64,000 bases of DNA. Origin: Basidiobolus meristosporus CBS 931.73. Taxonomy: Eukaryota > Fungi > Basidiobolomycota. Both the position numbers and the translations under genes were made by a program. The stretch spans positions 1 to 64,000 of the forward strand of contig MCFE01000486.1 of assembly GCA_002104905.1 (NCBI GenBank), written 5' to 3'. Positions 45,301-64,000 of this stretch are shown here, in pieces; within the stretch, counting starts at the first letter, position 1; each line of letters opens with the position of its first letter. The notes under the pieces are model-generated. The model was not told the DNA's origin, searched no databases, and was given only the letters and a program-made list of their open reading frames with translations.

Positions 45301-47058
45301 TCTGGCTTGTTTCCCATATATGCAGGCTTCACAGTGCTCCAAATTAGCTGGGGGATCAATTTTCACTCCAGAAATTAGCTGATCTTTGATCATTTTACGC
45401 AAATAATCAAAATTGATGTGTCCAAATCTCCTGTGCCAAAGCATTGGTGTTTCTTCATTTAAGTTACTTATATTGGCTTCCAGATATGATGGAATATAAG
45501 TCAACTTGTATAGGTTCTGATCTCTGATGCCCGAAGCAATATGAGCACCATTTTGATCAGTGATCCTGCATCCAGAATTGTCAAAACTGAAACTGAGTCC
45601 TTCTGCTGTGGCCTTGCTTACAGAGAGTAGGTTCTTGGCTATTTCTGGTACATAGAGTACTTCTTTAAAGGTCAGTGTATGGCTTCCTTCACTGCTTCTA
45701 AGGTTTACTTGGATAGTTCCTTCTCCCACTGCATCAAGTGTTCTATCGTCACCCATGAAAACCTTCTTAATTGGAATTTCTTGATATTGGGTAAAAAGTT
45801 CTTTTTGGTGTGTAAAGTGTTGAGAAGCTCCAGAGTCAATATACCACGTCTGAGAATCCTTGTTTGTGGTCATATTTAGTGCAGATATGAATAGTCTATC
45901 TTCAGTTGTTGCAGCATTTCCATATTCAGGCTTCTTTTGCTGATAATCTCTCTTTTTGAAACACCGGTCTGATGTGTGTCCTTTCCTTTTGCAGTAGTTG
46001 CAAAATAGGTTGCTGTTGCCTTTGTAGGGTCTTGGGTACCTCCTTTGTTGGTTATCATTGCTTATTAAAGCATTTTCTTCTTCCTTCTTATTGGCGCTTG
46101 ATTTTCTTAATTCTTCATCCAGGAGCCTTCCATATACGTAATTTAAGGTCAAATCTTCAGTTCTGGACTCTAGGGCTGATACAAGGCCCTGAAACTCGTC
46201 TGTCAGGCTATTCAGGATGGTAACTATCACATCCTCATCAGTAGTTGGTACGCCCACAGATTCCATCTCATCTACCAGCAGGGTAATTCTGTTAATTAGA
46301 TTTTTCATTTCTTCTCCTGGCAGCATCTTTGTAGTAAAGAATTTTCTTCTCAGATACATTTTCTTGGCAGCTGAACATGACTGGTAGGTGTCTTCTAATG
46401 CCTTCCAGGCATTCTTTGCCGTTTTTGCTCTTGAGCATTGAATTAGCAATTTGTCCTTGACATTAAGGCAAATGCAGTTAAAGGCACTTTGTTCTTTCTT
46501 CTGGTACTTTAAGGCTTCCTCTCCCACGTTTTTAGGAGGGCATTCTTCTCCCATGACAATATCCCAAAGGCCTCTTTCTTGCAGCAGCATCTTCATCTTC
46601 ACCTTCCACACTTGGTAGTTAGATCCATCCAACTTTTCAGCAGAGGGAAAAATTCCAGTAATAGCAGTAGTAGACATTGCAGAGAGTGACAGCTTGGGGC
46701 TCATAACCTGTTGTAAGAGTCTTGGAGATATTGGAAGTGATTTGGAGAACAAGTAGATTATGTGGTTTTCACTTAATGATTTATTGAATGTAAAAGTAGT
46801 ATTTATACTTTTACATGGTCTTGGCATTACAAACACGTAGAATAGGTTAAGGAAGGTCCCAAGAACATGTGTGCAAAGTTTGGGGCTGTTTGGACAACTT
46901 TGAGAATTTTCATGTTCTGGGTACCTGGTATTTTGGTGAAAATATTCTAAGTAAATCCCGACAAGGAATTTGGTCAGTATTCTCTAGGATTTGAAGGTGA
47001 TGATCTAAGTGACTAAGTTAGGTGAATATTTAGGTGGAAAATACGAATTTTTACAACA
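42372..47058 (-). mobile_element. Intact Ty1/Copia LTR retrotransposon (LTRs 42372-42721 and 46709-47058; TSD AAATA)
   Basis: 350-bp TG..CA LTRs with 2 mismatches seen by eye. PBS at 46696-46708, PPT gagtgggag, and an uninterrupted gag-pol. Confidence 0.97.
42733..46836 (-). CDS. Copia gag-pol polyprotein (gag, CCHC knuckle, protease, integrase, RT, RNase H); true start may be the MSPK at the PBS
   Basis: CNYCKRKGH, WYIDSGASQH, LWHRRFGH..CEAC, IHSDLCGP/SDNGGEY/NGVAER, LYVDD and GYSDADW/TEAEY/DNQG/ADIFTK, in Copia order IN-RT. Confidence 0.97.
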   Translation of the reverse strand: MFVMPRPCKSINTTFTFNKSLSENHIIYLFSKSLPISPRLLQQVMSPKLSLSAMSTTAITGIFPSAEKLDGSNYQVWKVKMKMLLQERGLWDIVMGEECPPKNVGEEALKYQKKEQSAFNCICLNVKDKLLIQCSRAKTAKNAWKALEDTYQSCSAAKKMYLRRKFFTTKMLPGEEMKNLINRITLLVDEMESVGVPTTDEDVIVTILNSLTDEFQGLVSALESRTEDLTLNYVYGRLLDEELRKSSANKKEEENALISNDNQQRRYPRPYKGNSNLFCNYCKRKGHTSDRCFKKRDYQQKKPEYGNAATTEDRLFISALNMTTNKDSQTWYIDSGASQHFTHQKELFTQYQEIPIKKVFMGDDRTLDAVGEGTIQVNLRSSEGSHTLTFKEVLYVPEIAKNLLSVSKATAEGLSFSFDNSGCRITDQNGAHIASGIRDQNLYKLTYIPSYLEANISNLNEETPMLWHRRFGHINFDYLRKMIKDQLISGVKIDPPANLEHCEACIYGKQARQPFKSSGLIKTKKKLDLIHSDLCGPMQNLSLGGMKYLITFIDDYTRYTWVYFMERKEEALSKLREFKAMVERETGEKIKKIRSDNGGEYTSKLFIHFCKIHGIKQETTVPYSPQQNGVAERANRSIIDMARSMIHDQKLSYDFWAESVATAVYLKNRSYNRILRDSTPFEAWYGYRPSAEHLRIFGCTAYAKKLAGNQSKFEPKSVKCIFLGYCNESKAYRLYNTEAKKLIKSRDVLFDENSKFSQKMTSDDDENLISSPPIVRIESEQNNENFFTPEDSTTVVQPESVPRNIPEVIIPVSNARRSNRTRNSPNYYINEGTNLAYAYSVHVDEPQTVKEALNSPQTKFWRSAMTEEYQALMENQTWDLVKLPINQKSIGCRWVFKTKYKADGTIERYKARLVAKGYSQTKGLDYTETFAPVAKFNSIRLILAIAAKYKFFIHQMDVKTAFLNGELDEDVYMDQPDGFVDQDNPHLVCKLKKSLYGLKQSPRAWNCKIDSYLESLSFKRSNADYSIYYKPDRANPVLLALYVDDLIIAANNLETLEETKSSLSKEFKMSDLGELSYYLGIKFSIDRSTQTITLSQSKYIQDILKKYKMEDCKPAATPMETNLNLVKTQPNQESLVPSESPDFPYQSMVGSLMYIMLGTRPDISYSVGVVSQHNQNYGSDHIAAVKRIFRYLKGTADICLRYTYKDSEQDLVGYSDADWGRNLEDRRSTTGYTFLYCKGAISWNSRKQPTVALSTTEAEYMAACEATKEAMWLRKLFADLGLCQKTPITLFQDNQGCIQLDRNPTFHARTKHIDIRHHFIREAIENNLVSLVYCPTDEMIADIFTKPLAKDKFEYFRSKLGLVSMNI

Positions 47059-47469: not shown

Positions 47470-50400
47470 AATATAAGCCTACTCTTCATCAATACACTCA
47501 ACAGCTTCATAGATCTTCAATGTATTTTGACTTTAAGGCTTGGGTATAAACACAACAGTCTATCCCTCCCATGCTATGTTAGATTTTTCTGCAGGCTTTA
47601 TTGTTGGGCACTGTTGTTGTGCTTCAAAGGCCATACCATGTTCCCCTATTGTCACATTGAGAAATGGCTCAACTCGTAACTGTGATATTGAGCTACTTGA
47701 GCTCCTTCTTTGCAGTAAAGATACTGCAGTCTCTGCTTGGGGTACTGATTGCTCTACATGTATTATCCTCTTATCCTGTCACTGGACTATTCCCTGATTT
47801 CTCTGGGCTTTTGCATCTGTCCATCAGTCACTGCAACTAATTGCCTCATTGATGATTTGGCATGAGCTAACAACATAGTTGCCAATACTGGCAGTGGTGA
47901 TGTTACAATGGCTACTGTACCGCTTCTTGCTTGGGCAGACTGCTTTCATTGACCTATCCATTGTCCTCTACCATAATCACTGCCAGATGTGTTACTGCTA
48001 CTTTGCCTGTATGCTGCTTGCAATGTGCTAGGAGTTTCATAGGTAAGTACAGCACTGCTGCATCTGTTTCTGCCTGCTTGTCCTTTAATAGCACTCTTCT
48101 AGCTATCAGACATCTTTCTGCCACTTGATCTCAGCTTTGACAGGGATTGTGACTGATTCATGAGGCAGCTGCTGGCTTTTAGCTATGACAGCCTTGTACT
48201 TCTGCTTTGAAAGTTTCTGCTGTTCTTGCAATATTTGGTTAGCATATCATTGCTGGCCCAAAATGAGCCCCCTACTGTGAAGAGGTCACATAAGTCCATT
48301 AGAGCTTACTTATCTAACTAGATGAAAAAAGTATGAATAAAGCTTGCTGAACCTTGTGATTTAGTGTGTGTCTCAACAAAATTAAGATTGTGTCTCAGCA
48401 AAATTAAGATTCAACAATTCTGTTCTAGTTTCCATTCAAGCTTAGCATATCTAGCACTCCCAGGAACACCAAGCCTAAATTGCATAGCAATCCAACTCTG
48501 TTGCCATTATAGCCAAACCATGCCCTATGCGAGACTAACATCCAATCAGAATCTCTCTGCTAATATTTCAGCCACTCTCTGACAATTCTAGGACTCTGCA
48601 CTTAAGGTTTGCACTTCTGGTTAAAATAACAGAGCTGGTGCTCCAATGTCACCCAATGAAGTATATGGATTGTCTTTTTTAGGTCTTTTTTGAAATATGT
48701 CATAGGTTTTACTGCAGTGCCCAGTGCCTAGCTCATGTAAGCACCAGCAATACTAGTGAGTACATCCAGGCAGTAGGTGGGTAGTCTTCAACCTAGATTC
48801 TAATAAGTAGTGACTCTTCTACACATGGCTTTCCCTACTGATTCTAGACGTACCTGGCAATCTTTTCAACTTTGAAAATCCATTATTACCCAGTGATGCC
48901 TTTATATGGGCACTAGACTGTTGTGCTTGCCAAGCATATAGATCCTGCTCTTTGACCATATGTGCTGCTCTTTACCTATATACAGCACTTAATATTGGGG
49001 ACTCTGGGCAGTGCAGGCTTGCATATATATCTCACTATGGCCAAAGGTTGCTTTCAGCTAGCAATCAAGAAAGCTTGAGACACAAACTGTGTGGGTTATT
49101 ACTGACTGTACTTGGTGAGTGGGAGAGCTTGTAGGTCAAGTCAGTACCACTTGGTTCAGAATAGCTTCCAATAGGAGGTAGTAAGGTAATAAAGACTTGT
49201 GTTTATTTTGTCCCAAATCTCCTTGTTCTCTTGCTTGGTTCAATTGGGTAGATATATATCACTTGGGGGCTTAGATAATAGACAATGTGTTATAAAATAG
49301 GGGTGTGAACACCTTCCTATTATGGTAAGTGTTCTAACTAGATAAGGGCAGGGATAGGAGGGAGGGCACGTGGGGGAATCATAGGGAGGATACTGGGGGA
49401 CTTTGGGTAGGACTCTGGGGAGAACTCTTGGGTGAAGAGTGGGTACTGCATTTAGTACTCACAAACTGCAGTCATTTATAAATATAACTCATTCATATCT
49501 TTCTTCCTTTGAAAGTATCAGCAAGAGCTGAGGTGAAAAGGGGTTAGTAAAGCAGCTAGTTAGTCAAGTGAAGCTCTGTAAGAAGATAAGATCAGAAAAG
49601 ATCAGCACAATACTGTAATACTGTTAGCCAATTGCTAAGTTTTGCAACCCTTAATATATGAGATACTAAGTATTTGACAAATAGGTATTTCTGTCTTCCA
49701 ACAGATGAGTGAGCCTGCCAGCATTCATACCAAATATGTTAAACAACTACTCACTACTCCCACCAAAAGTTGCACCTCCAAGTTTAGAGAAAAAACACTG
49801 GGTGAATGCCAGCAAAAACCTGAGAGAATACCATCAAAATACTGGCAAACTATCAGATGGACTTCCTGTTAGAGGTTTTTGATAGGGACTATGTCTATAA
49901 TGCTCAATAATAGAGGTCAAGTGAGCAAAGACTTGAAAACATCTGAAACTGGCAAGTGTGCATGGATGCTCATTAGTAGCTGTCAGGACAAAGCTAGCCT
50001 ACCACTAAATTTTTTGTTTTCATATTACACAATGTGGACTCATAACTTTTGTAGCCAGCATACACCATAGAGGCAGTGTCCTGGGGTAAATATTAGTTTT
50101 GGCTAGTTGCAACTATTAGATGTAATTTGCTGTAGCATGATTATCACTGGGCATTTGCATTGATCCTAATCTAGTAATCTGCTTAGCCTATGCACACTAT
50201 ATTATGGCTGCTAGCTAGTAAAGTTATTTACAAGTTCTGGAAATAGCATCCTAGCCACCCTTGACATATGTATTGCTGAATATACTTCTATGTCATCATG
50301 CCACTGCTCTCACTTAAGATTGTATTACTCACCTCCTTACTTTGTTAGCTAGAACTTGCTGCTACTAGAATATTTAATATTAAGGCATGTATACAAGCTG

Positions 50401-50550
50401 CCAGCTGAGGGATGATGATTTGGGGCTGTTGCTGTTTAGGTAGATAAAGGGTCTGCTAATGGCCTGTACTTGAGCAAGCTGATAAAATTTTGATAGTGCA
50501 TTGGCCTTACCAAACAAATGGCCATTGATGATGAGCTTCAAAAATAGGAC
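47470..50550. other. Unclassified CpG-depleted TE-derived relic
   Basis: Very few CG dinucleotides and no intact ORF; family not recognised. Confidence 0.3.
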
Positions 50551-51511
50551 CATTACAACCGTGATTACTCACTTGTTAGAATTCACTCACACATATCTGA
50601 GAAACCTTACTTCTCAATCAATGGCAGGTCTTCTTTGCTGAAAGCTAACGTCTCCTGATAACAGGCTCCCAACCACTGAGCACATAGCTTGTTGGTATAA
50701 AATATCTGAGATTAAAAATATGGGATTGGTGCAACAAGCAAGAGGAAGGAAAGCTGGGTGACCACGTGGCAACTTCCCTCATGAAATTGACAACCTTCTG
50801 CCACTTTCTCTATGCCACTCAAGCTACTAATTAATTATTAATAATGGAAACAGTACTAGCGCGTATGACACCAACAGCGGTAGCAGCGGTAATAGCAGTG
50901 CTGGGAACGGAGGGACTAGCAATGGTGGTAATGACGGGAATGCAGGAAACAGGGCTGGAGGCTGTGATTCTGAAGGTGGTGGTGCCGGGGATAGAGGTGC
51001 TGGCATGGAAATGATAAATAAGTAATGGCAATAACGATGTCAACAAAAGCGGAGGCCAGTGTAACTAAAATGTAACATAGAATTGTTTGTAACTCAGTAA
51101 AGTATCTACCATTTCAATGGCCCCAGGATTCAGGCCAACATGCACTGGTGTACTCAGTATATACTGCTTTTCATGATTCTATTTGGCTCTCCCAGATTAT
51201 CCAAAATAACAGCATAGATAAACTGCTGCTTACGACACTCTGTAACAGGCTGCACTTGAAACAACAGCATATGTAGCCTCGGAAATGCTTGGCATTCCTG
51301 GTATCGGGTTTTGCAGTCAGAAATACATATAACAATAACCATGCAACTTTTGTTCGTTTATTAGTCAAAACAAGTAAAGCCATATTTCTTTGGGTTATCC
51401 TTGCATAAGTTACTAAAATGTACTTAGGCACTGTGCGTAGTGGTCTTCGTTTCATACAATCAATCTGGACAGAAGCCAGGCACCAGAAATCCATTGGCAG
51501 TGTTTACATGA

Positions 51512-52180
51512 CTAATAGTCATAATTCTCGAAAGGATTCATGGTAAACGGAGCTTTGTAGCCATTTTTTGGCATCATGGGTAACACCACACTACTGCGAA
51601 GTCCATTCTTGATCATATTTTCGGTGGCAGGGATGATTGTGTTATACTGAGATCCAGGACCATGTGGGATCATACAAACACGTTCTCCGACACAGTTGGG
51701 TTCGCTATAAAAGCAATAGATGGCTTCGGTAGGCCAGTAAAGGACAAAGCCTCCGTTATTCTCAACGGGGTCAATGTTTGCGCACTGCCTAAACTCAGGA
51801 TACGTGATGGGGAAGCCATCCACGCCGCTGGCATCACTGGCTAAAGAAATTGTCGCAGTTGCGGCAACAGTTTCGTTGACATCGTTGTCCTCAATGGCTG
51901 CTTGGTTGGCCGGGCTACTCCAGATCAAAAACCTTGCATCCAGCTCTGATGCCACCACCCCGGAGAACCATGCAGGGTTGCAAACAGGAAAGCCTCCATA
52001 TAGATTCTGCGCCTCTTCGGAGTTGTTACAAGGAGCATCAACAGGGTACTCTTGCTCAATCGGTGTGGAAGTAAGCGCAGGAATCTTCCCCGTGAGGTCA
52101 AGAGTGATCCCGGTAGGCTTAGCTAAGGCAGAAGCAGCAAGCACGGTCCAAACAGCTAGGGCGGTCAAGCGAAGTTGCAT
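51512..52180 (-). CDS. Secreted protein of unknown function (intronless, about 222 aa)
   Basis: Signal peptide MQLRLTALAVWTVLAASALA; Cys motif YCFYSEPNCVG near the C-terminus. Confidence 0.7.
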   Translation of the reverse strand: MQLRLTALAVWTVLAASALAKPTGITLDLTGKIPALTSTPIEQEYPVDAPCNNSEEAQNLYGGFPVCNPAWFSGVVASELDARFLIWSSPANQAAIEDNDVNETVAATATISLASDASGVDGFPITYPEFRQCANIDPVENNGGFVLYWPTEAIYCFYSEPNCVGERVCMIPHGPGSQYNTIIPATENMIKNGLRSSVVLPMMPKNGYKAPFTMNPFENYDY

Positions 52181-55100
52181 ATTAATCTTTGGGGTTGGGA
52201 TGCTCCACAAATACACGCATAGCATCTATTATATACCGATGATGCCCCTGCTTCCCTCCGTTGTCTGACTGATGCCTTATCGCAGTGGAAAATTCCATCC
52301 GTCTGATTTTTGCTTGCTATCATTTTTCCACCTCATCCTACCAGACACTAGGTGGCAACAGCATCTTGACCACGCCAAGCAGCCGCAGAGGTATTCATGA
52401 AAGTGGAATATTCTATTACGCTACTCAATATAGTAATGCAAGTGGTTGTTTGTCAGTACAACATTCTAGCTGCTTCCTACCGACCAACTTGGTGGAGTGG
52501 TGGTCAACACTGCAACACATGTGAAAAAAGATAGATTTACCAAAAGGGGCTAGTCAAAGAAGTAGATATCAAATGAGAGCACGAGTGAGGTATATCCTTG
52601 TATATATGTCATGTATCTACTTGCTCCTACAAAACTGACCCGATGTGTAAGATGCAAATTTATTGGTCTTACCAGGTCTGTTGTTATTGACCCAAGGATG
52701 AGGGATAATACAGCCAGTGTGAAATTATTTGGTGTGTCACAAGATCGCACAATATGAATATTGATGCACCATCTGAGTTGTACATTAGCCTTGAACGCTG
52801 CCTTCTAAGCTTCATGTTATGGATAGCCTCAGTGAGGAGAATTGATGGTCTTTTTTTATTCATAGAATCATCATATTCTGCGCCTAGCCAATGGTCTATT
52901 GTAATTTGGCTTCTATTTTCATTGCTCGTAATACTTGTATGTACTTCCATTTTTGGCGAAATTCGCCGATAAGGAATAAATATGGTTTGAGAATGTAGTT
53001 ATCACGAACAATCTTTATTACTAATCCCAAGTAGCTCGATCAATCTGTATGAACTTGTATGGGCAAATGGGGTTCAAGAAATTGGCATTTACATCATCAT
53101 TGCGGTGCTGAGCTCTTCAAACAATGCATAAAGGAATGAGTCAATTTCAGATGGCAATTAGAAGTAAATAAGCTCGATTGTAGCTAATACCGAGCTCAGA
53201 GATGTCAGTGACTTTTGATAAAACAACAGTAGCTCAACATGAATGGATGGGAGCGGTAGCATTTCAACCAGAATTTGATGATCATACTGCCATTGCAGTG
53301 AATCATAAAAAACGCTTTGCCCCAAGTCGAAGTATTTTGCTACAATATGTGAGAAAACTAAACACACCAAGTGCTGCTGATAAGTGTGGTTTCTCAGGGA
53401 GATATGGGATATTGCAATATAATCAGCAAAACCGCTTTTTTATTATCTCTCATTGTTAGTTGGACTGGGGGAAGACACAGCTCAAATGCTGCATAGACAA
53501 GTTGTTTAAGAGGAAACTCTATTCTAGACGGTTATTTAGATACAGTAATCACTCCCACAAGCATGTGAAGTGCTCAGATGACAAGTACTATGCTGCTCCG
53601 TAAATGCATCATTGTGATGAAGTCTTTAGTGAGGGTAGGAGGGTGACAGTCACCATAAAGTGAAATCTTTATTTCAATAACTCATAATAACGAAGCAAAG
53701 TGCGATATGTGTAGCTTTTTAACAAGTGAACAAAGAGAGGTATCTTTTTGCGACAGCTTATATAAATGACTACTAAGCTGAAAAGGAGTCAAGACAGGGT
53801 TAAGTGGCTGTGGGGGTATAACTGAAGGAGGTAATGGGTTATTGAGAGGAGCTAATGATATTTCATATAACAAAGTCATTTTTGGCTACATCGGCGGTGA
53901 CCTACCAAGGTGGATCGCCGCGTGATAAACAGAATCTGTTGATCAACATTTAGATGAATAGCCTCTCATTTGCAGTTGTAAATACCGATACTTTCATCTT
54001 CCAAATCGTTTTCTGGATTGAATTTTATGAAGGATTTACTGTTTTGTCGACTACATTGCCGGATTTTGAGTCATGCCTCAAACGGTACTGAATTTATTTC
54101 TACCACATTAATTCAGTTTTTTATTGAGCAGTTAGTAACAGGAAGCTGTCGTACGCACACGGCAAAGTACTGACGCTGCTAAGTGTATGTTTCATTTGAT
54201 AGCGATGGTGTGCTTACTAACTTGGACCTGGCTTAGTGCTCCATTTCTTTCGATTCCTTTTGACGCGACTCGGTCAGGCGCTATTAATAAGTATATATTA
54301 AAAGAAATAAGTACCTGAACCAGTACCTATTTGAGCTATATATGTACAAATCAACATTCAGTAATGCACTCGAAAGGGCTCGAGAAGTGGCGTTAAATAA
54401 AATCTCTTCCCAATTTTCTTACTGTATATTCGTCCATGGATTAACAAATCGATCACATATACTTGTCATCCGCAAGCAGAAGTAGCCGTAGCAAGAAACG
54501 AAACCTCCAGGATTTGATTGGATGGCTTGTAAAGCATCATCATTAGCGGCAATTCTATACAGCCATTCACCCACACTGACTTTCGTTTAGAAGACGAAAT
54601 GGACCTTAGACTCAGCTCAGAGGTATATGAAGCCTATATTAGCTCTCATGAAGTCCAAGAATCTATTGTCTGCCACAGTTACCTAGAATATACATTTTCT
54701 TCAATAGATTCACGATTGAACCACTGTACCATGAACGTTTTGATTACGGGAAAGGCTTACAATTGGCCTATAACAACCTTTTGAGCACCAATAAAGATCC
54801 CTGTTGGATGATTTAGTAGAAGCCAAATTTCGTGGTGGCTCTGTTACTTATTTCGGACAGTAATCATGATGAAATATGGGTGATAATCCATCTCAAGCAA
54901 CGAACGGATATCCTGTAAGCTGCCATGACAATTGTTTTACTGACGTAAAGACTGTCCAAATCAATTTTCAAGTGCGATTCTGGAAGCCCAGACCAAAATG
55001 CATGCTCAAGGTGGGTAAAGATATTGTCTACACTACCTCAATTGTCAAGGAGAGGCATAGTGCCGAGTCTGAGTTAGCGGGCATCAAAGCCACCGCCTAT

Positions 55101-55729
55101 CATTTCCATCAATCGGTAATCGAGATATCCGACGCGCAACATATGGTAACCAGTTACCGAATTGAGTGGTGATACATGGAAACTTGTGATAATATTCAAG
55201 TCAAACTACAAATAGAAGCGTTTCAATGGATACGTTTTATCATCCGAAGGATATACTAACCACATGTGCATGCCATATTTTTCATAAAATTGCCTGCAAT
55301 GCACCCTGAGACCAATCTACTGAAATCCAGCTAGTCGGGAGTGATACACGATATAATCTCAAATACCATCTTAGAGCTAAGTAGTTGATCAAAAACCCGA
55401 TCCGGAAATCGTACACAGATCTACACAGATATTCGGTGGTCATTGGCTGGCTCCAAATTTATTTGGCACACTGCGGAACCCAGAAAGTCAACTGAAATAA
55501 CCATATATGGCAATGATGGAAATAACGACCAGGCCTTCAATTGCCAATATCAGACAGAAAATGTGATCTAACCAGCACAGGCTAAAACGCCGCTCATAAA
55601 AAGTTTGATCGTAATTGTCGGTGCAACACGTGATACCTGAATTTATTGATGGTAGTTCGCAAAAACGGTGTAAACGCATTACACTTGGTGACGAGCAACA
55701 CGAGAGTGCTGAACATGTAAAGGGCACAA

Positions 55730-56722
55730 TTACTGTGCCTTTGCGGTCTTCTTGACTTCGAACCGGCGGTTGGTCGCAGGGGCATCATATTCCAGTTTAG
55801 TGGAGCCTTTACAGTAAGCATCAGTGGTGCCACAGTAGCCATAGCTGGAGCAGCAGTAGCCAGGTTGGCACTGACGCATCACATCTCCAAACCAGCCACA
55901 ACGTCTATCAGTTTGATTTGCAACAACAATGTCTATTCCCAAATTATTGGGATCGTATGGATACCACTGCCATTGTATGGGTTTGTTGTTATATCCATCG
56001 TAGCCAGCCGGGCCGTTGATAGACATCCAGATAGCCGTTTTATTATCTGCGAAGCCTGCACCCCATGTGCCGTCGGGACCAGGATATGTATAAGATATTG
56101 AGCCACCGAGCGAGGGGTACCAATACTTGGCGCCATTATGTTTGTAGGCTTGTTTACTCCAAACGCCCACGCGCATTCCATTGTCGAGTCCCTGGGGATT
56201 TTCGAGAAATTGGTCGAAGCGGCCAAGACCATTGCTTAGGTTGTCGTTGATAACCCGCAGTTTACCAAATAGCATCCATTCGTCATCAATACGTAGTTGG
56301 GCTGTGTAGATCAAATAATCACCATCCTCCTCGTAATCAATCTGGAAGCCGTAATCCACTCCATCAAGCCATGGATAAAAGTACTGCATGTGGGACCCAG
56401 TGCCCTCGTGGCCAAAGCGACTAGTCACACACTCCTTGCATGTCTCCACTACGGTTGCTCGTCCTTTGGAGTTGTCCCAGAGAGAGAAGAGGAATACACG
56501 TTTTTCGGCCCATGTCTGCATTCCCATATATCCGTTGTTCCAGCCGATGGCCTCCCAGTAAGTTTGGTTGGGACTAAATTCAGGAACAGACCTAACGTCA
56601 GTCTGAAAGGAGATAAACTTCTTCCCATCATCGGGGAGACTGGCATGGTTGTGCATTGCCTGCGAGAGCACCTTTGCTGCGAACAGCGAGGTAAGCGAGA
56701 GGAAAAGAGTTGGAAGCTGCAT
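55730..56722 (-). CDS. Secreted DUF3472-like + hevein/CBM18 chitin-binding protein (copy 1)
   Basis: Signal peptide; GW..GYMGMQ..RVFLFSLWD, FGHEGTG..YPW..G..Y.F and QFLEN (DUF3472-like); C-terminal CG.....CQPGYCCSSYGYCGTTDAYC (CBM18). Confidence 0.8.
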   Translation of the reverse strand: MQLPTLFLSLTSLFAAKVLSQAMHNHASLPDDGKKFISFQTDVRSVPEFSPNQTYWEAIGWNNGYMGMQTWAEKRVFLFSLWDNSKGRATVVETCKECVTSRFGHEGTGSHMQYFYPWLDGVDYGFQIDYEEDGDYLIYTAQLRIDDEWMLFGKLRVINDNLSNGLGRFDQFLENPQGLDNGMRVGVWSKQAYKHNGAKYWYPSLGGSISYTYPGPDGTWGAGFADNKTAIWMSINGPAGYDGYNNKPIQWQWYPYDPNNLGIDIVVANQTDRRCGWFGDVMRQCQPGYCCSSYGYCGTTDAYCKGSTKLEYDAPATNRRFEVKKTAKAQ

Positions 56723-57789
56723 GATATTCTACCGAAACATGGAACTCGACCATGCTTATAAAGCAGTTCCATTTTGCCAACACAACGATCACGTTTCGTT
56801 ACAAATTATGAGAACAAGCAGAGATTTCACCCTGATTTAGTAGTGGATGATTGTGCTCTACTATTGTGGCAACTCGGGTAGTTGAGTACCACTTAGTATG
56901 AAATGAATGGATCCTCAATGGTGATCCACGGATAAATAACATCGTTGATGATGGTTTCATGCGGCTTATAGAAGATTCCAAAACTAAAGGTATCTTACAT
57001 ACTGGTCTTGATAAATGACGGTCCAAGGAAGGATTATCTGAATTCGGATGTAGCTGCTCCTACAGTGCACACATGACGCATTAGTATACAGTCAGTGAAC
57101 CTAGAGTGTTCTATCATAGCGCGAGGAATTCGGAACTACAATAATGGCATAGGCTATAAGCAGTAACTTGTGCACAACCCTCTTTCTTCTCAGCAATTGT
57201 GAAGCTCGGAAGAGGCTATACCAACACCACAGCCATCGAGGGTCAAATCCAACGCTTCAGTTAGGAAATATAGACATTCTTCACCATGCGCCAAGGAGCA
57301 CGAGCATGGCGGATGCAATATCCTGGTGAGACAGTTTGCCAAAGATGAGTTGTAATGTGCACACTACTCCAGAACGTCAACACATTCTAGCATATCTACT
57401 AATAATGATCAGTGTCTAAAATGCGGTGGCGATAGCCTGTCCACTGCTCATTTCACAAATTACTCACACATTTGGAATATAGTTTAGCCATACCGCACGT
57501 GATATTTCAGCGTTCCTCGCGTATCATACCTTCATAGACACTCTCATAGAACTTCATAGTATCCGGGTGTATAAGGTTAAGGTTCCGATTGCTTGACTTA
57601 ATAAATGTTCCGATTAAGGTTAGTTCAATGTGGCCAATAGATTACCTAAAATAATCTTTGTCGAGATTCCGATTTAGAGTTAGCATTATGTTTCAGTAAG
57701 GAGCTGAGCATCATGGAAAATCACACTAAACTCCATTTTTGACCAAGCCGATAAACACATAGATTTCCCTTTTCTGAAAGTATCATTTG

Positions 57790-58120
57790 ATTTGGTTGAT
57801 GCAACCAGGGTCCGATTGGTGGTCGACAAATGTGGGATGGAGGATTGATAGGTGATGCGAGATAGAGGTATCTGCGGGCTGGCCAAGCCTTTTGATCTTG
57901 CCAAAGATTTGCTTATATGGAAAACCCCACTTAAAAATATGGCTTAGGGGCTCGTCGGAACACTTTGAAAGATAAACATTTGCGCAGACCCGACATACTC
58001 CCCATTTCCAGGGCTTCGTGACAGATCTTGCATCAGCTTCCTGTTCCGTCAGAAGTAAATCTGGAAAATACCAAAATTTCCCGGATTGATTGAACTGGAA
58101 CAACATGACTTATGACCAAC
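57790..58120 (-). pseudogene. Remnant resembling the N-terminus of an MFS monocarboxylate (Mch-like) transporter; mirror copy at ~59110-59440 (+)
   Basis: NFGIFQTYF and YVG(S/P)AQMFIF resemble SFGVFQxYY and WIGSxQxF. In-frame stops are present in both copies. Confidence 0.4.
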
Positions 58121-60504
58121 ATTCAGCAAACTCATTGGGCAATTGGGATACTGAAGCCACTGTTTAGTGCTTCGGGGCGTAAGTATGTGGCCAATCATTA
58201 TCAATATTAATAAAGAGAAAAGTTAGGATGCGGGCATTGTGGTAATGGCCAGGTGAGGGAAAGCCACCAGTATAGTGAGATCTTTATCTCACTCAGTATG
58301 TACAAAACTACTAAAGCTAAGGTAAGGAAGCCAGGAAAGTGTTACTCACCATCCCAAGTAAGCAATCTAGAACTTTGTTTCTTGGTTACGTTGCCCTGAA
58401 TTGAATGAAGCCACTTACTCAAATGGCTTGCAGCTATTATTCTTACTTGCTCCAGCTGTGTTACAACCAGTATCTATTTCTAGAGCTTCTGTGTTAAACT
58501 ATGTACTGTTGTCATCCTGTAAAAGCACTAAAATTCTCACCATAAGATGTACATCCCTACCGGCTTAAATTTTTGCCATATTTTTGACTGCAAATATAGA
58601 TCTCACCAACTCTTATTGACTTTTCCTCCTTCCTAGCGCTAAGTAGCGCTCCCACAAGATTTCATGCTGGCATATCTTTGCCGACTTTGTGCCAGTTACT
58701 GTTCTAGCTGTAAAGTTACTGAGAGCAGAAAAGCCCAAACTGTATTATTTATTCTATAGAAAAATGCCATTTATAATATGTAATTTCCCAACGCACTTTG
58801 ATTTTCTCTTCTCCTGAGAGTAACCTCATATAATTCAGTGCAATATCACCCAAGAAACAAAGCTCAAGTTAGACTATTTACTAATGATATTCAATTAATC
58901 TTTGCGGCCTTCTTTACTTTAGCCTTGGTAACTTTGTACCTACTTAGTAAGATAAGGATCTCACCATACTGGTGGCTTTCCCTCCCCTGACTGTTACCAG
59001 AATGCCTGCATCTTAACTTTCCCCTCTATTGATGCTAATAATGATTGGCCGCGTACGTGCACCTGAAGCACGGAACAATGACCTCGGTATTCCAGTTGCC
59101 CAATGAGTGATTGTGTGTCGATTGTTGATAATAAGTCATGTCGTTCCAGTTCAATCAATCCGGTAAATTTTGGTATTTTCCAGACTTACTTCGGACGGGA
59201 TAAGAAGCTGATACAAGGTCTGACACAAAGCCCTGGAAATGGGGAGTATGTTGGGCCTGCGCAAATGTTTATCTTTCTAAGTATTCCGACTAGCCCCTAA
59301 GCCATATTTTTAAGTGGGGTTTTCCATATAAGTAAAATTTTGGCACAACCAATAGGCTTGGCCAGCCCGCTGATACCACCATCTTGCATGACCCATTGAT
59401 CCCCCATCACATATTTGTTGTCCATCAATCAGACCCTGGTTGCATCAACCAAATCGAATGATACTTTCAGAAAAGGGAAATCTATGTGTTTATCGGCTTG
59501 GTCAAAAATGGAGTTTAGTGTGATTTTCCATGATGCTCAGCTCCTTACTGAAACATAATGCTAACTCTAAATCGGAATCTCGACAAAGATTATTTTAGGT
59601 AATCTATTGGCCACATTGAACTAACCTTAATCGGAACATTTATTAAGTCAAGCAATCGGAACCTTAACCTTATACACCCGGATACTATGAAGTTCTATGA
59701 GAGTGTCTATGAAGGTATGATACACGAGGAACGCTGAAATATCACCTGAGGTATGGTTAAGCTATATTCCAAATGTGTGAGTAATTTGTGAAATGAGCAG
59801 TGGACAAGCTATCGCCACTGCATTTTAGACACTGATCATTATTAGTGGGTATGCTAGATTGCGTTGACGTTCTGGAGCAGCGCGTACATTGCAACTTATT
59901 TTTGGCAAACTGTCTCGCCATGCTCGTGCTCCTTGGCGCATGGTGAAGAATGTCTATATTTCCTAACTGAAGCGTTGGATTTGACCCTCGATGGCTGTGG
60001 TGTTGGCATAGCCTCTTCCGAGCTTCACAATTGCTGAGAAGAAAGAGGGTTGTGCACAAGTTACTGCTTATAGCCTATGCCATTATTGTAGTTCCGAATT
60101 CCTCGCGCTATGATAGAACACTCTAGGTTCACTGACTGTATACTAATGCGTCATGTGTGCACTGTAGGAGCCGCTACATCCGTATTCAGATAATCCTTCC
60201 TTGGACCGCCATTTATCAAGACCAGTATGTAAGATATCCTTAGTTTTGGAATCTTCTATAAGCCGCATGAAACCATCATCAACGATGTTATTTATCCGTG
60301 GATCACCATTGAGGATCCGTTCATTTCATACTAAGTGGTACTCAACTACCCGAGTTGCCACAATAGTAGAGCACAATCATCCACTACTAAATCAGGGTGA
60401 AATCTCTGCTTGTTTTCATAATTTGTAATGAAAAGTGATCTTTGTGTTGGCAAAATGGAACTGCTTTATAAGCATGGTCGAGTTCCATGTTTCGGTGGAA
60501 TATC

Positions 60505-61497
60505 ATGCAGCTTCCAACCCTTTTCCTCTCGCTTACCTGGCTGTTCGCAGCAAAGGTGCTCTCGCAGGCAATGCACAACCATGCCAGTCTCCCCGATGAT
60601 GGGAAGAAGTTTATCTCCTTTCAGACTGACGTTAGGTCTGTTCCTGAATTTAGTCCCAACCAAACTTACTGGGAGGCCATCGGCTGGAACAACGGATATA
60701 TGGGAATGCAGACATGGGCCGAAAAACGTGTATTCCTCTTCTCTCTCTGGGACAACTCCAAAGGACGAGCAACCGTAGTGGAGACATGCAAGGAGTGTGT
60801 GACTAGTCGCTTTGGTCACGAGGGCACTGGGTCCCACATGCAGTACTTCTATCCATGGCTTGATGGAGTGGATTACGGCTTCCAGATTGATTACGAGGAG
60901 GATGGTGATTATTTGATCTACACAGCCCAACTACGTATTGATGACGAATGGATGCTATTTGGTAAACTGCGGGTTATCAACGACAACCTAAGCAATGGTC
61001 TTGGCCGCTTCGACCAATTTCTCGAAAATCCCCAGGGACTCGACAATGGAATGCGCGTGGGCGTTTGGAGTAAACAAGCCTACAAACATAATGGCAGCAA
61101 GTATTGGTACCCCTCGCTCGGTGGCTCAATATCTTATACATATCCTGGTCCCGACGGCACATGGGGTGCAGGCTTCGCAGATAATAAAACGGCTATCTGG
61201 ATGTCTATCAACGGCCCGGCTGGCTACGATGGATATAACAACAAACCCATACAATGGCAGTGGTATCCATACGATCCCAATAATTTGGGAATAGACATTG
61301 TTGTTGCAAATCAAACTGATAGACGTTGTGGCTGGTTTGGAGATGTGATGCGTCAGTGCCAACCTGGCTACTGCTGCTCCAGCTATGGCTACTGTGGCAC
61401 CACTGATGCTTACTGTAAAGGCTCCACTAAACTGGAATATGATGCCCCTGCGACCAACCGCCGGTTCGAAGTCAAGAAGACCGCAAAGGCACAGTAA
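60505..61497 (+). CDS. Secreted DUF3472-like + hevein/CBM18 chitin-binding protein (copy 2)
   Basis: Mirror copy of 55730-56722, differing by two residues (S12W and an A->S in HNGAKY). Confidence 0.8.
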   Translation: MQLPTLFLSLTWLFAAKVLSQAMHNHASLPDDGKKFISFQTDVRSVPEFSPNQTYWEAIGWNNGYMGMQTWAEKRVFLFSLWDNSKGRATVVETCKECVTSRFGHEGTGSHMQYFYPWLDGVDYGFQIDYEEDGDYLIYTAQLRIDDEWMLFGKLRVINDNLSNGLGRFDQFLENPQGLDNGMRVGVWSKQAYKHNGSKYWYPSLGGSISYTYPGPDGTWGAGFADNKTAIWMSINGPAGYDGYNNKPIQWQWYPYDPNNLGIDIVVANQTDRRCGWFGDVMRQCQPGYCCSSYGYCGTTDAYCKGSTKLEYDAPATNRRFEVKKTAKAQ

Positions 61498-64000
61498 TTG
61501 TGCCCTTTACATGTTCAGCACTCTCGTGTTGCTCGTCACCAAGTGTAATGCGTTTACACCGTTTTTGCGAACTACCATCAATAAATTCAGGTATCACGTG
61601 TTGCACCGACAATTACGATCAAACTTTTTATGAGCGGCGTTTTAGCCTGTGCTGGTTAGATCACATTTTCTGTCTGATATTGGCAATTGAAGGCCTGGTC
61701 GTTATTTCCATCATTGCCATATATGGTTATTTCAGTTGACTTTCTGGGTTCCGCAGTGTGCCAAATAAATTTGGAGCCAGCCAATGACCACCGAATATCT
61801 GTGTAGATCTGTGTACGATTTCCGGATCGGGTTTTTGATCAACTACTTAGCTCTAAGATGGTATTTGAGATTATATCGTGTATCACTCCCGACTAGCTGG
61901 ATTTCAGTAGATTGGTCTCAGGGTGCATTGCAGGCAATTTTATGAAAAATATGGCATGCACATGTGGTTAGTATATCCTTCGGATGATAAAACGTATCCA
62001 TTGAAACGCTTCTATTTGTAGTTTGACTTGAATATTATCACAAGTTTCCATGTATCACCACTCAATTCGGTAACTGGTTACCATATGTTGCGCGTCGGAT
62101 ATCTCGATTACCGATTGATGGAAATGATAGGCGGTGGCTTTGATGCCCGCTAACTCAGACTCGGCACTATGCCTCTCCTTGACAATTGAGGTAGTGTAGA
62201 CAATATCTTTACCCACCTTGAGCATGCATTTTGGTCTGGGCTTCCAGAATCGCACTTGAAAATTGATTTGGACAGTCTTTACGTCAGTAAAACAATTGTC
62301 ATGGCAGCTTACAGGATATCCGTTCGTTGCTTGAGATGGATTATCACCCATATTTCATCATGATTACTGTCCGAAATAAGTAACAGAGCCACCACGAAAT
62401 TTGGCTTCTACTAAATCATCCAACAGGGATCTTTATTGGTGCTCAAAAGGTTGTTATAGGCCAATTGTAAGCCTTTCCCGTAATCAAAACGTTCATGGTA
62501 CAGTGGTTCAATCGTGAATCTATTGAAGAAAATGTATATTCTAGGTAACTGTGGCAGACAATAGATTCTTGGACTTCATGAGAGCTAATATAGGCTTCAT
62601 ATACCTCTGAGCTGAGTCTAAGGTCCATTTCGTCTTCTAAACGAAAGTCAGTGTGGGTGAATGGCTGTATAGAATTGCCGCTAATGATGATGCTTTACAA
62701 GCCATCCAATCAAATCCTGGAGGTTTCGTTTCTTGCTACGGCTACTTCTGCTTGCGGATGACAAGTATATGTGATCGATTTGTTAATCCATGGACGAATA
62801 TACAGTAAGAAAATTGGGAAGAGATTTTATTTAACGCCACTTCTCAGAGCCCTTTCGAGTGCATTACTGAATGTTGATTTGTACATATATAGCTCAAATA
62901 GGTACTGGTTCAGGTACTTATTTCTTTTAATATATACTTATTAATAGCGCCTGACCGAGTCGCGTCAAAAGGAATCGAAAGAAATGGAGCACTAAGCCAG
63001 GTCCAAGTTAGTAAGCACACCATCGCTATCAAATGAAACATACACTTAGCAGCGTCAGTACTTTGCCGTGTGCGTACGACAGCTTCCTGTTACTAACTGC
63101 TCAATAAAAAACTGAATTAATGTGGTAGAAATAAATTCAGTACCGTTTGAGGCATGACTCAAAATCCGGCAATGTAGTCGACAAAACAGTAAATCCTTCA
63201 TAAAATTCAATCCAGAAAACGATTTGGAAGATGAAAGTATCGGTATTTACAACTGCAAATGAGAGGCTATTCATCTAAATGTTGATCAACAGATTCTGTT
63301 TATCACGCGGCGATCCACCTTGGTAGGTCACCGCCGATGTAGCCAAAAATGACTTTGTTATATGAAATATCATTAGCTCCTCTCAATAACCCATTACCTC
63401 CTTCAGTTATACCCCCACAGCCACTTAACCCTGTCTTGACTCCTTTTCAGCTTAGTAGTCATTTATATAAGCTGTCGCAAAAAGATACCTCTCTTTGTTC
63501 ACTTGTTAAAAAGCTACACATATCGCACTTTGCTTCGTTATTATGAGTTATTGAAATAAAGATTTCACTTTATGGTGACTGTCACCCTCCTACCCTCACT
63601 AAAGACTTCATCACAATGATGCATTTACGGAGCAGCATAGTACTTGTCATCTGAGCACTTCACATGCTTGTGGGAGTGATTACTGTATCTAAATAACCGT
63701 CTAGAATAGAGTTTCCTCTTAAACAACTTGTCTATGCAGCATTTGAGCTGTGTCTTCCCCCAGTCCAACTAACAATGAGAGATAATAAAAAAGCGGTTTT
63801 GCTGATTATATTGCAATATCCCATATCTCCCTGAGAAACCACACTTATCAGCAGCACTTGGTGTGTTTAGTTTTCTCACATATTGTAGCAAAATACTTCG
63901 ACTTGGGGCAAAGCGTTTTTTATGATTCACTGCAATGGCAGTATGATCATCAAATTCTGGTTGAAATGCTACCGCTCCCATCCATTCATGTTGAGCTACT

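What the first reader, a model, noticed from the sequence alone, without database searches (positions are those of the whole stretch)
55730..61497. Secreted fusion of a bacterial-type DUF3472-like domain with a eukaryotic hevein (CBM18) module, held in two head-to-head copies
Seen: intronless 330-aa ORF with signal peptide, a DUF3472-like motif set and a C-terminal hevein Cys pattern. Established: DUF3472 is mostly bacterial, usually paired with DUF5077, and functionally uncharacterised; CBM18 is a eukaryotic chitin binder. Inference: a possibly horizontally acquired domain re-targeted to chitin, e.g. an arthropod-cuticle, nematode or antifungal effector or an unrecognised glycan-active enzyme. 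The two copies differ at about six nucleotides, all in the 5' two-thirds, and both are intact.
Basis: partly seen in the sequence, partly recalled or inferred. Interest (0 to 1): 0.8.

Follow-up and report, generated by a model that had tools for sequence, protein, structure and literature searches.

The report
Fungal mucinase-like enzyme with chitin anchor
The gut fungus Basidiobolus meristosporus carries two near-identical, head-to-head genes for a secreted protein that joins a domain of the recently characterised bacterial "di-glutamate mucinase" family (DUF3472) to a hevein-type chitin-binding module, a domain combination my searches found only in this fungus.

Summary
Two intact, intronless 330-aa ORFs (55730-56722 minus; 60505-61497 plus) each carry a signal-peptide-like leader, PF11958/DUF3472 (E 8e-39) and PF00187/CBM18 (E 2e-8). 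They differ at 6 nt (2 aa).

The window is B. meristosporus CBS 931.73 contig MCFE01000486.1. The pair lies in a palindrome with arms of at least 8.8 kb. A second contig, 98.4% identical, has the same pair with the same left/right differences, so the duplication looks real.

- DUF3472 is no longer uncharacterised. The modelled domain (pLDDT 86) matches HC7, a Bacillus cereus di-glutamate mucinase filed in PDB as a DUF3472 protein (Z 26.4).
- HC7 Glu200, mutated to Ala in the substrate complexes, aligns to Glu174 here (FLEN). The FGGEGTG Glu aligns to Glu106 (FGHEGTG).
- HC7 uses a CBM5; here a CBM18 takes that place.

Recent bacterial transfer is not supported. The genes sit in a Basidiobolus-only clade of at least 22 gene models. 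That clade lies within a clade of single-domain proteins whose identified members are eukaryotic or virus-like. Their composition resembles other long ORFs in the window.

Best reading: a secreted O-glycoprotein-cleaving enzyme tethered to chitin. The scan also noted the paralogous copies elsewhere in this genome.

The parts
55730..56722 (-). Copy A coding sequence, 330 aa, single exon (leader, DUF3472 domain, CBM18, basic tail)
56657..56722 (-). Copy A signal-peptide-like leader, aa 1-22 (MQLPTLFLSLTSLFAAKVLSQA). Ser-Gln-Ala precedes the first modelled strand.
   Evidence: Read directly from the sequence. Relatives in alignment A3 have the same hydrophobic N-terminus. The model is low-confidence at residues 1-18 and its first strand starts at residue 21. 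No signal-peptide predictor was available.
55958..56662 (-). Copy A DUF3472 beta-sandwich (jelly-roll) domain, aa 21-255
   Evidence: Pfam E 8e-39. AF2 pLDDT 86. 4QHX Z 29.6 and HC7 8PMU Z 26.4.
56405..56407 (-). Copy A Glu106 in FGHEGTG, aligned to HC7 Glu131 (FGGEGTG)
   Evidence: Glu at this column in 159 of 164 family domains.
56201..56203 (-). Copy A Glu174 in FLEN, aligned to HC7 Glu200 (the residue mutated in the E200A substrate complexes)
   Evidence: Glu at this column in 153 of 164 family domains.
55808..55903 (-). Copy A CBM18/hevein module, aa 274-305. It has six Cys (275, 285, 290, 291, 297, 304) and Ser292, Tyr294, Tyr296 and Tyr303 at the hevein sugar-binding positions.
   Evidence: Pfam E 2.4e-8. 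Alignments to pokeweed lectin-C, WGA and hevein. Residues checked.
60505..61497 (+). Copy B coding sequence, 330 aa (protein P0001). Glu106 is at 60820-60822, Glu174 at 61024-61026 and CBM18 at 61324-61419.
56723..60504 (.). Divergent 3.8-kb region between the two start codons. It holds the inner palindrome arms (99%, 92%, 81% and 76% identity stepwise) and a central spacer of about 560 bp (58340-58899).
   Evidence: A 1,264-nt short-read contig covers 58058-59321 with 3 differences.
49502..58339 (.). Left arm of the palindrome. Its outer limit is set by the contig end, not by a true boundary.
58900..64000 (.). Right arm of the palindrome. It continues to contig position 67699, beyond the window.

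Best explanation
Each gene encodes a secreted two-module protein. The N-terminal module is an enzymatically competent member of the DUF3472 (PF11958) family, whose characterised member HC7 is a di-glutamate mucinase. That enzyme cuts the peptide backbone of densely O-glycosylated proteins, and it has a jelly-roll fold related to GH16 glycanases and to glutamic peptidases. The C-terminal module is a short six-cysteine hevein/CBM18 domain with an intact aromatic sugar-binding face.

Proposed mechanism (inferred): CBM18 docks the enzyme on chitin or GlcNAc-rich surfaces. Candidates are insect peritrophic matrix and cuticle debris in the amphibian or reptile gut, or a fungal wall. Glu106 and Glu174 then cleave neighbouring mucin-like O-glycoproteins, much as HC7 uses its CBM5.

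The gene arose inside a Basidiobolus-specific expansion of single-domain DUF3472 genes by gain of CBM18. It was then duplicated as an inverted pair that is kept nearly identical within a large palindrome.

Shown here: domain identities, fold, conservation of the two glutamates, purifying selection, phylogenetic placement, and the reality of the duplicate pair. Inferred: secretion, catalytic activity, substrate and biological role.
For: - Pfam hits well above the curated cut-offs.
- The AF2 model (pLDDT 86, pTM 0.85) matches 4QHX at Z 29.6 and HC7 8PMU at Z 26.4 over 233 residues. Next come neprosin at Z 14.6 and GH16 at Z 13.
- The family profile hits HC7 at E 1.5e-25. HC7 E200 aligns with E174, and the FGGEGTG Glu aligns with E106.
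- Both Glu are present in 153 of 164 family domains and in every CBM18-clade member, while one Basidiobolus subclade has lost them.
- HC7 is described as a di-glutamate mucinase that uses its CBM5 to broaden activity (PMC13003899, citing Nat Catal 2024;7:386).
- The hevein binding residues are intact.
- dN/dS among the CBM18 paralogues is 0.12-0.15.
- The tree puts the CBM18 clade at 100/100, its sister P0004 (no CBM18) at 100/99, and the Basidiobolus-only clade at 97/96.
- The left/right copy differences are shared by two contigs that are 98.4% alike.
Against: - No activity, secretion or firm expression data exist for this protein.
- That the first glutamate is catalytic in HC7 is my inference from the name 'di-glutamate' and from its conservation. 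The primary paper could not be read.
- The closest structure, 4QHW/4QHX, was deposited as a 'putative sugar hydrolase', so a glycosidase chemistry is not excluded.
- Identity to HC7 is only about 19%.
- The one characterised Burkholderia member behaves as an adhesin.
- CBM18 ligand specificity was not tested.
- The only hint of transcription comes from a run whose type is not on record.
Confidence: 0.55

Rival explanations
1. The DUF3472 module is a glycoside hydrolase or transglycosylase acting on a polysaccharide (chitin, chitosan, beta-glucan or a glycan side chain), and CBM18 targets it to fungal or arthropod chitin. On this reading it is a wall-remodelling or antifungal enzyme, not a peptidase.
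For: The fold is a GH16-like jelly roll (Z about 13 to lichenases). 4QHW was deposited as a 'putative two-domain sugar hydrolase'. Some bacterial members are fused to GH16 domains (PF00722). CBM18 typically accompanies chitinases (established knowledge).
Against: The only member with a solved substrate complex (HC7) binds glycopeptides and is reported as a mucinase (PMC13003899). The match to HC7 (Z 26) is much stronger than to GH16 (Z 13).
Confidence: 0.2
2. The protein is a non-catalytic lectin or adhesin. Both modules bind glycans, and the protein mediates attachment of the fungus or its adhesive conidia to chitinous or mucosal surfaces.
For: The family member BPSS1860 is surface-located and needed for host-cell attachment in Burkholderia pseudomallei (PMC7998038). 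The beta-sandwich fold is shared with many lectins and CBMs. A Basidiobolus subclade has lost the glutamates, which shows that non-enzymatic use exists in the family.
Against: This clade keeps both glutamates and the whole invariant motif set (GYxGxQ, FSxWD, FGxEGTG, FLEN, R184) under purifying selection.
Confidence: 0.15
3. The second copy is an assembly fold-back artefact at a contig end, so there is really one gene.
For: The right arm runs exactly to the contig end. The outer arms are 99-100% identical.
Against: - The centre has a 560-bp unique spacer and diverged inner arms (76-92%), unlike a fold-back artefact.
- A short-read contig spans the centre.
- A second contig, 98.4% identical, has the same head-to-head pair.
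- The four left/right-specific differences (CDS 35, 312, 592, 593) recur in both contigs.
Confidence: 0.05

Closest known systems
HC7, the Bacillus cereus K8 di-glutamate mucinase (PDB 8PMU, 8PN3, 8PN5; Narimatsu et al., Nat Catal 2024;7:386, cited in PMC13003899)
   Same: Same Pfam family (PF11958) and same jelly-roll fold (Z 26.4, 233 residues). The two glutamates and the surrounding invariant motifs are conserved. In both, the catalytic domain is joined to a carbohydrate-binding module from a family best known for binding chitin.
   Different: About 19% identity. HC7 is a bacterial 659-aa multi-domain protein with CBM5; this is a fungal 330-aa protein with a single six-Cys CBM18. No activity has been shown for the fungal protein.
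BACCAC_02064 (PDB 4QHW/4QHX), Bacteroides caccae DUF5077+DUF3472 protein
   Same: It is the best structural and sequence match among solved structures (Z 29.6; profile E 1e-50).
   Different: It has an N-terminal DUF5077 domain that is absent here, has no CBM18, and its function is untested.
BPSS1860, Burkholderia pseudomallei surface attachment factor (newer Pfam versions name PF11958 after it)
   Same: Same Pfam family, extracellular location, and a role at a host surface.
   Different: It was characterised only genetically, as an adhesin and virulence factor. It is bacterial and has no CBM18.
Centipede venom DUF3472 proteins, and the 'nematoblast specific protein' name given to a Tetrahymena DUF5077+DUF3472 protein
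   Same: These are eukaryotic members of the same family. The centipede proteins are secreted into venom (PMC7864903).
   Different: They are mostly two-domain (DUF5077+DUF3472) and group with bacterial sequences. The Basidiobolus genes are single-domain and fall in a separate clade whose identified members are eukaryotic or virus-like.
M60-like/enhancin mucinases with CBMs (for example BT4244, and baculovirus enhancin)
   Same: They have the same logic: a mucin-backbone-cleaving enzyme steered by a carbohydrate-binding module. Enhancin targets the chitin-plus-mucin peritrophic matrix (established knowledge).
   Different: They have an unrelated fold and chemistry (zinc metalloprotease).

Membership tests
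DUF3472 / PF11958 (di-glutamate mucinase family) | Significant match to the family profile | tested here: met
   E 8.4e-39, 134 bits against a cut-off of 24.8.
DUF3472 / PF11958 (di-glutamate mucinase family) | Jelly-roll beta-sandwich fold as in HC7 and 4QHW | tested here: met
   AF2 pLDDT 86. Z 29.6 to 4QHX and Z 26.4 to 8PMU. Foldseek E 2e-19 and 1e-14.
DUF3472 / PF11958 (di-glutamate mucinase family) | Two conserved glutamates (HC7 Glu131 and Glu200 by chain numbering) | tested here: met
   E106 (FGHEGTG) and E174 (FLEN) align to them. That Glu131 is the second catalytic residue is inferred, not read from the primary paper.
DUF3472 / PF11958 (di-glutamate mucinase family) | Cleavage of O-glycosylated mucin-type peptides | not testable with these tools
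   This needs recombinant protein and glycopeptide or mucin reporter assays.
CBM18 / hevein (PF00187) | Profile match and cysteine framework | tested here: met
   E 2.4e-8, 34.5 bits against 27.8, covering profile positions 1-31 of 38. Six of the eight canonical Cys are present (275, 285, 290, 291, 297, 304). The last Cys pair is absent, as in the short Amaranthus-type heveins that also match.
CBM18 / hevein (PF00187) | Ser plus three aromatic residues of the GlcNAc-binding face | tested here: met
   CCSSYGYCG...AYC aligns to CCSQWGYCG...EYC of pokeweed lectin-C and to WGA. This places Ser292, Tyr294, Tyr296 and Tyr303 at the binding positions.
CBM18 / hevein (PF00187) | Binding to chitin or chito-oligosaccharides | not testable with these tools
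   This needs a pull-down or ITC with the recombinant module.
Recent bacterium-to-fungus horizontal transfer | Nesting within bacterial sequences, a close bacterial relative, or foreign composition | tested here: not met
   The gene nests in a Basidiobolus-only clade (97/96). That clade lies inside a clade of single-domain proteins (92/95, below the tool's own star threshold) whose identified members are eukaryotic or virus-like. The best non-Basidiobolus hit is 35% identical or less. CDS GC is 0.49 and GC3 0.54, like other long ORFs in the window.

The most novel reading that the evidence does not exclude
These genes encode the first eukaryotic (fungal) di-glutamate O-glycoproteases. They are anchored by a hevein module to chitin-associated mucin-like matrices, such as insect peritrophic matrix in the prey-filled gut or vertebrate gut mucus reached from the fungus's own chitin wall. 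The Basidiobolus expansion to at least 22 gene models, which includes a branch of likely pseudoenzymes, would then be an adaptation to its gut-passage lifestyle and possibly to gastrointestinal basidiobolomycosis. A virus-like contig is the nearest outgroup, and DUF3472 genes occur in an insect bidna-like virus. Both would fit virus-mediated spread of the family among eukaryotes.
Probability: 0.3. Interest if true: 0.7.

Novelty: new variant of a known kind. Interest (0 to 1): 0.5.

Why it matters
- Mucin-backbone-cleaving enzymes are known mostly from bacteria. I know of no characterised fungal member of the di-glutamate (DUF3472) family, though I ran no literature search aimed at that question.
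- Basidiobolus lives in amphibian and reptile guts and occasionally causes human gastrointestinal disease. A chitin-tethered mucinase-like enzyme, present in several nearly identical copies and in a large lineage-specific family, is therefore a concrete candidate for how it deals with mucus, insect peritrophic matrix or competing fungi.
- Bacillus cereus joined the same catalytic domain to CBM5 and Basidiobolus joined it to CBM18. This independent pairing with CBM families best known for chitin suggests a shared functional logic that could be tested.
- Such enzymes are also of practical interest as glycoproteomics tools.

Tried and rejected
- Single-sequence AF2 of the full protein gave pLDDT 35 and was discarded. 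Only the alignment-based model of residues 1-270 was used, so the CBM18 and the inter-domain geometry were not modelled.
- A Pfam scan of all 150 hits failed on the size limit. I replaced it with a regular-expression and HMM check in a script.
- The third word search, with alignment A4, returned almost only bacterial single-domain DUF3472 proteins (Planctomycetota, Acidobacteriota) and no fungal names, so it did not map the fungal range.
- The ESM Atlas feature search points to Ascomycota DUF3472 clusters, but at scores below 0.9. That is a lead only.
- The bacterial promoter and terminator scan is irrelevant for a fungus and showed no excess.
- The primary HC7 paper is not held.
- The P0002 C-terminal extension has no counterpart downstream of the window copies.
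- The fold-back-artefact reading of the palindrome was considered and rejected.
Full report
**What is there.** The window is positions 1-64000 of contig MCFE01000486.1 (67,699 bp) of Basidiobolus meristosporus CBS 931.73, assembly GCA_002104905.1.

Two open reading frames face each other with their 5' ends:
- Copy A is 55730-56722 on the minus strand.
- Copy B is 60505-61497 on the plus strand. The ORF lister starts it at an upstream ATG (60487), but the deposited gene call and all homologues start at MQLP.

Each is a single 993-nt exon encoding 330 aa. Both hit Pfam PF11958/DUF3472 (E 8e-39, aa 14-241) and PF00187/Chitin_bind_1 (E 2.4e-8, aa 274-305), each above the curated threshold.

The copies differ at six nucleotides, at CDS positions 15, 35, 312, 345, 592 and 593. 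This gives S12W in the leader and A198S.

**The duplication is real.** The genes lie in a palindrome.
- The arms are 49502-58339 and 58900-67699, 97.9% alike over 8,846 nt.
- Arm identity falls stepwise towards a spacer of about 560 bp: 100%, 99%, 92%, 81%, 76%.
- The right arm reaches the contig end, so the outer limit is unknown.

Four things argue against a fold-back artefact:
- The centre is diverged and asymmetric.
- A 1,264-nt contig from short-read-like runs of the same organism spans 58058-59321 with three differences.
- A second contig (MCFE01000226.1), colinear at 98.4% over 11.8 kb, carries the same head-to-head pair.
- The left-versus-right differences at CDS 35, 312 and 592/593 recur in both contigs. 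The inverted duplication therefore predates the split of the two haplotype-like contigs.

**The N-terminal domain.** A single-sequence model was useless (pLDDT 35). With a 15-sequence alignment the model of residues 1-270 reached pLDDT 86 and pTM 0.85.

Its structural matches are:

| Match | Score |
|---|---|
| 4QHX (Bacteroides caccae BACCAC_02064) | Z 29.6 |
| 8PMU, the apo form of HC7 | Z 26.4, 233 residues, rmsd 2.9 |
| neprosin (glutamic peptidase) | Z 14.6 |
| GH16 lichenases | Z about 13 |
| 4QHW, by Foldseek | E 2e-19 |
| HC7 chains, by Foldseek | E 1e-14 |

The PDB names the HC7 chains 'DUF3472 domain-containing protein'. A profile of the Basidiobolus-type sequences hits them at E 1.5e-25.

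[quoted passage not shown] I could not read the primary paper.

Comparing the wild-type and E200A chains places HC7 Glu200 in the FQED motif, which aligns to Glu174 (FLEN) here. HC7 Glu131 (FGGEGTG) aligns to Glu106 (FGHEGTG).

Across 164 family domains Glu is present at these columns in 159 and 153 cases, and at both in 153. All CBM18-clade members keep both glutamates, together with GYxGxQ, FSxWD, W118 and R184. One Basidiobolus subclade has lost them.

Another family member, BPSS1860, is a surface attachment factor of Burkholderia pseudomallei (PMC7998038).

**The C-terminal domain.** Residues 274-305 align to pokeweed lectin-C, WGA and hevein.
- Six of the eight canonical cysteines are present (275, 285, 290, 291, 297, 304). 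The last pair is absent, as in the short Amaranthus-type heveins that also match.
- Ser292, Tyr294, Tyr296 and Tyr303 occupy the hevein sugar-binding positions.
- A basic 25-residue tail follows.

**Origin.** An exhaustive phmmer search of 1.84 billion representative proteins with the N-domain found only 310 clusters at E <= 1e-3 and 11 at E <= 1e-10.

Of the ten best non-self representatives I looked up, four are Basidiobolus (three B. meristosporus paralogue clusters and one B. ranarum cluster) and one is Chlamydoabsidia padenii (Mucoromycota). That Chlamydoabsidia gene sits on a 1.1-Mb contig between Argonaute, aconitase and kinase genes. The other five are unnamed environmental sequences. 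A second look-up named nine more hits from the same tree clade as Basidiobolus. One unnamed group lies as a tandem array next to a copine gene on a 76-kb eukaryote-like metagenome contig.

A careful ML tree of 64 domains (LG+C20 PMSF) gives these groupings:

| Grouping | Support (UFBoot/SH-aLRT) |
|---|---|
| CBM18 clade | 100/100 |
| CBM18 clade plus sister P0004 (B. meristosporus, no CBM18) | 100/99 |
| Basidiobolus-only clade of 16 rows | 97/96 |
| Virus-like contig protein P0075 as next neighbour | 91/86 |
| 31-row clade of single-domain proteins (identified members eukaryotic or virus-like) | 92/95 (below the tool's star threshold) |

Both B. meristosporus and B. ranarum occur in two subclades of the Basidiobolus-only clade. 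P0075 sits on a contig with PolB and a faint A32-like ATPase hit. The single-domain clade is separate from the Bacteroidota DUF5077+DUF3472 proteins.

The named look-ups give at least 22 DUF3472 gene models in this assembly, some probably allelic. CDS GC (0.49) and GC3 (0.54) resemble other long ORFs in the window, while the flanks are AT-rich at 0.41.

A recent bacterial transfer is therefore not supported. The family is nonetheless overwhelmingly bacterial (1,809 hits at E <= 1e-8, mostly Planctomycetota-type single-domain proteins; Bacteroidota two-domain forms). An ancient entry into eukaryotes remains plausible, as argued for centipedes (PMC7864903).

The CBM18 fusion was found only in B. 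meristosporus: the four palindrome copies, P0002 and P0003. No hit in any list carried PF00187 with PF11958 apart from these. Limits of that statement: only the best 150 of the 310 phmmer hits were inspected, and the word search sees only close relatives.

**Function and selection.** dN/dS among the CBM18 paralogues is 0.12-0.15, so they are maintained as proteins.

One run of a coded related organism, of unrecorded type, covers only the coding parts at very high word depth. Its variant letters match paralogue P0002, and it has one near-identical 479-nt contig at depth about 11. This would fit a transcriptome in which P0002 is highly expressed and the window copy weakly expressed, but it is not proof.

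**Mechanism.** My preferred reading (confidence about 0.55) is a secreted glycoprotease of the HC7 type, docked by CBM18 on chitin or GlcNAc-rich material, cutting mucin-like O-glycoproteins nearby.

The rivals are:
- a GH16-like glycanase (0.2);
- a non-catalytic lectin or adhesin (0.15);
- an assembly artefact for the second copy (0.05).

Bacillus cereus (CBM5) and Basidiobolus (CBM18) each paired this catalytic domain with a CBM family best known for chitin. The domain also occurs in an insect bidna-like virus (bioRxiv 10.1101/2020.10.16.342956). Both facts point, by analogy with enhancins, to chitin-plus-mucin matrices such as the peritrophic membrane. This last step is inference only.

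**Verdict.** This is a real and well-defined pair of genes. It is a new domain-architecture variant of a family whose chemistry has recently become known. It is not a recent bacterial import. Interest is moderate (0.5).

The scan also flagged the paralogous copies on other pieces of this genome. No operator restriction on human-like or broken toxin sequence was triggered.

Noticed in passing
window 42372-47008: An apparently intact Ty1/copia LTR retrotransposon. Its 300-nt LTRs (42372-42671 and 46709-47008) are 99% identical. They flank a 1,416-aa gag-pol ORF (42736-46983, minus strand) with gag, integrase and RVT_2 domains. It lies in an AT-rich, repeat-rich block (about 36-48 kb) next to the palindrome.
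   Followed up: partly
window 51512-52225 (-): A 237-aa ORF (gene aa) with a hydrophobic N-terminal leader and no Pfam hit. It lies in the palindrome arm and is duplicated in the right arm beyond the window (contig 65048-65716). Contig 226 has further diverged copies (84-89%).
   Followed up: partly
L007 210-884 (metagenome contig ERZ27280177 k141_1660391): The DUF3472 protein P0075 sits on a virus-like contig with a type-2 DNA polymerase B and a faint Pox_A32 ATPase hit. It groups as nearest outgroup to the Basidiobolus clade (91/86). Drosophila Vesanto virus also encodes DUF3472 proteins, so viruses are a possible vehicle for the family among eukaryotes.
   Followed up: partly
proteins P0062, P0069, P0094, P0008/P0155 (B. 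meristosporus and B. ranarum): One Basidiobolus DUF3472 subclade has replaced the FGxEGTG and FLEN glutamates and other invariant motifs. These are likely pseudoenzymes or lectin-like derivatives. Four of them (P0069 and three near-identical members) lie on a single 181-kb contig.
   Followed up: partly
L005 3745-5136 (contig MCFE01001198.1): Paralogue P0002 (K493DRAFT_364892; 84% identical at the protein level, 85% at the DNA level) reads through the position of the window genes' stop codon. It adds a 133-aa Cys-containing C-terminal extension with no Pfam hit and no counterpart downstream of the window copies. A run of unrecorded type covers coding parts only, at depth 2,000-7,800, with letters that match this paralogue.
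   Followed up: partly
L003 (JGI metagenome 3300047123, contig Ga0499899_0084): An unidentified eukaryote-like contig (low gene density, copine neighbour) carries at least six DUF3472 genes within about 17 kb. This is another lineage-specific expansion of the single-domain form.
   Followed up: no
window 56723-56900 versus 60327-60504: Divergence between the two copies rises towards the palindrome centre. There are 0 differences in the last 400 nt of the CDS and the 130 nt downstream, 6 in the first 593 nt of the CDS, and 5 in the 178 nt upstream of the ATG. A TATAAG motif lies about 40 nt upstream of each ATG.
   Followed up: partly
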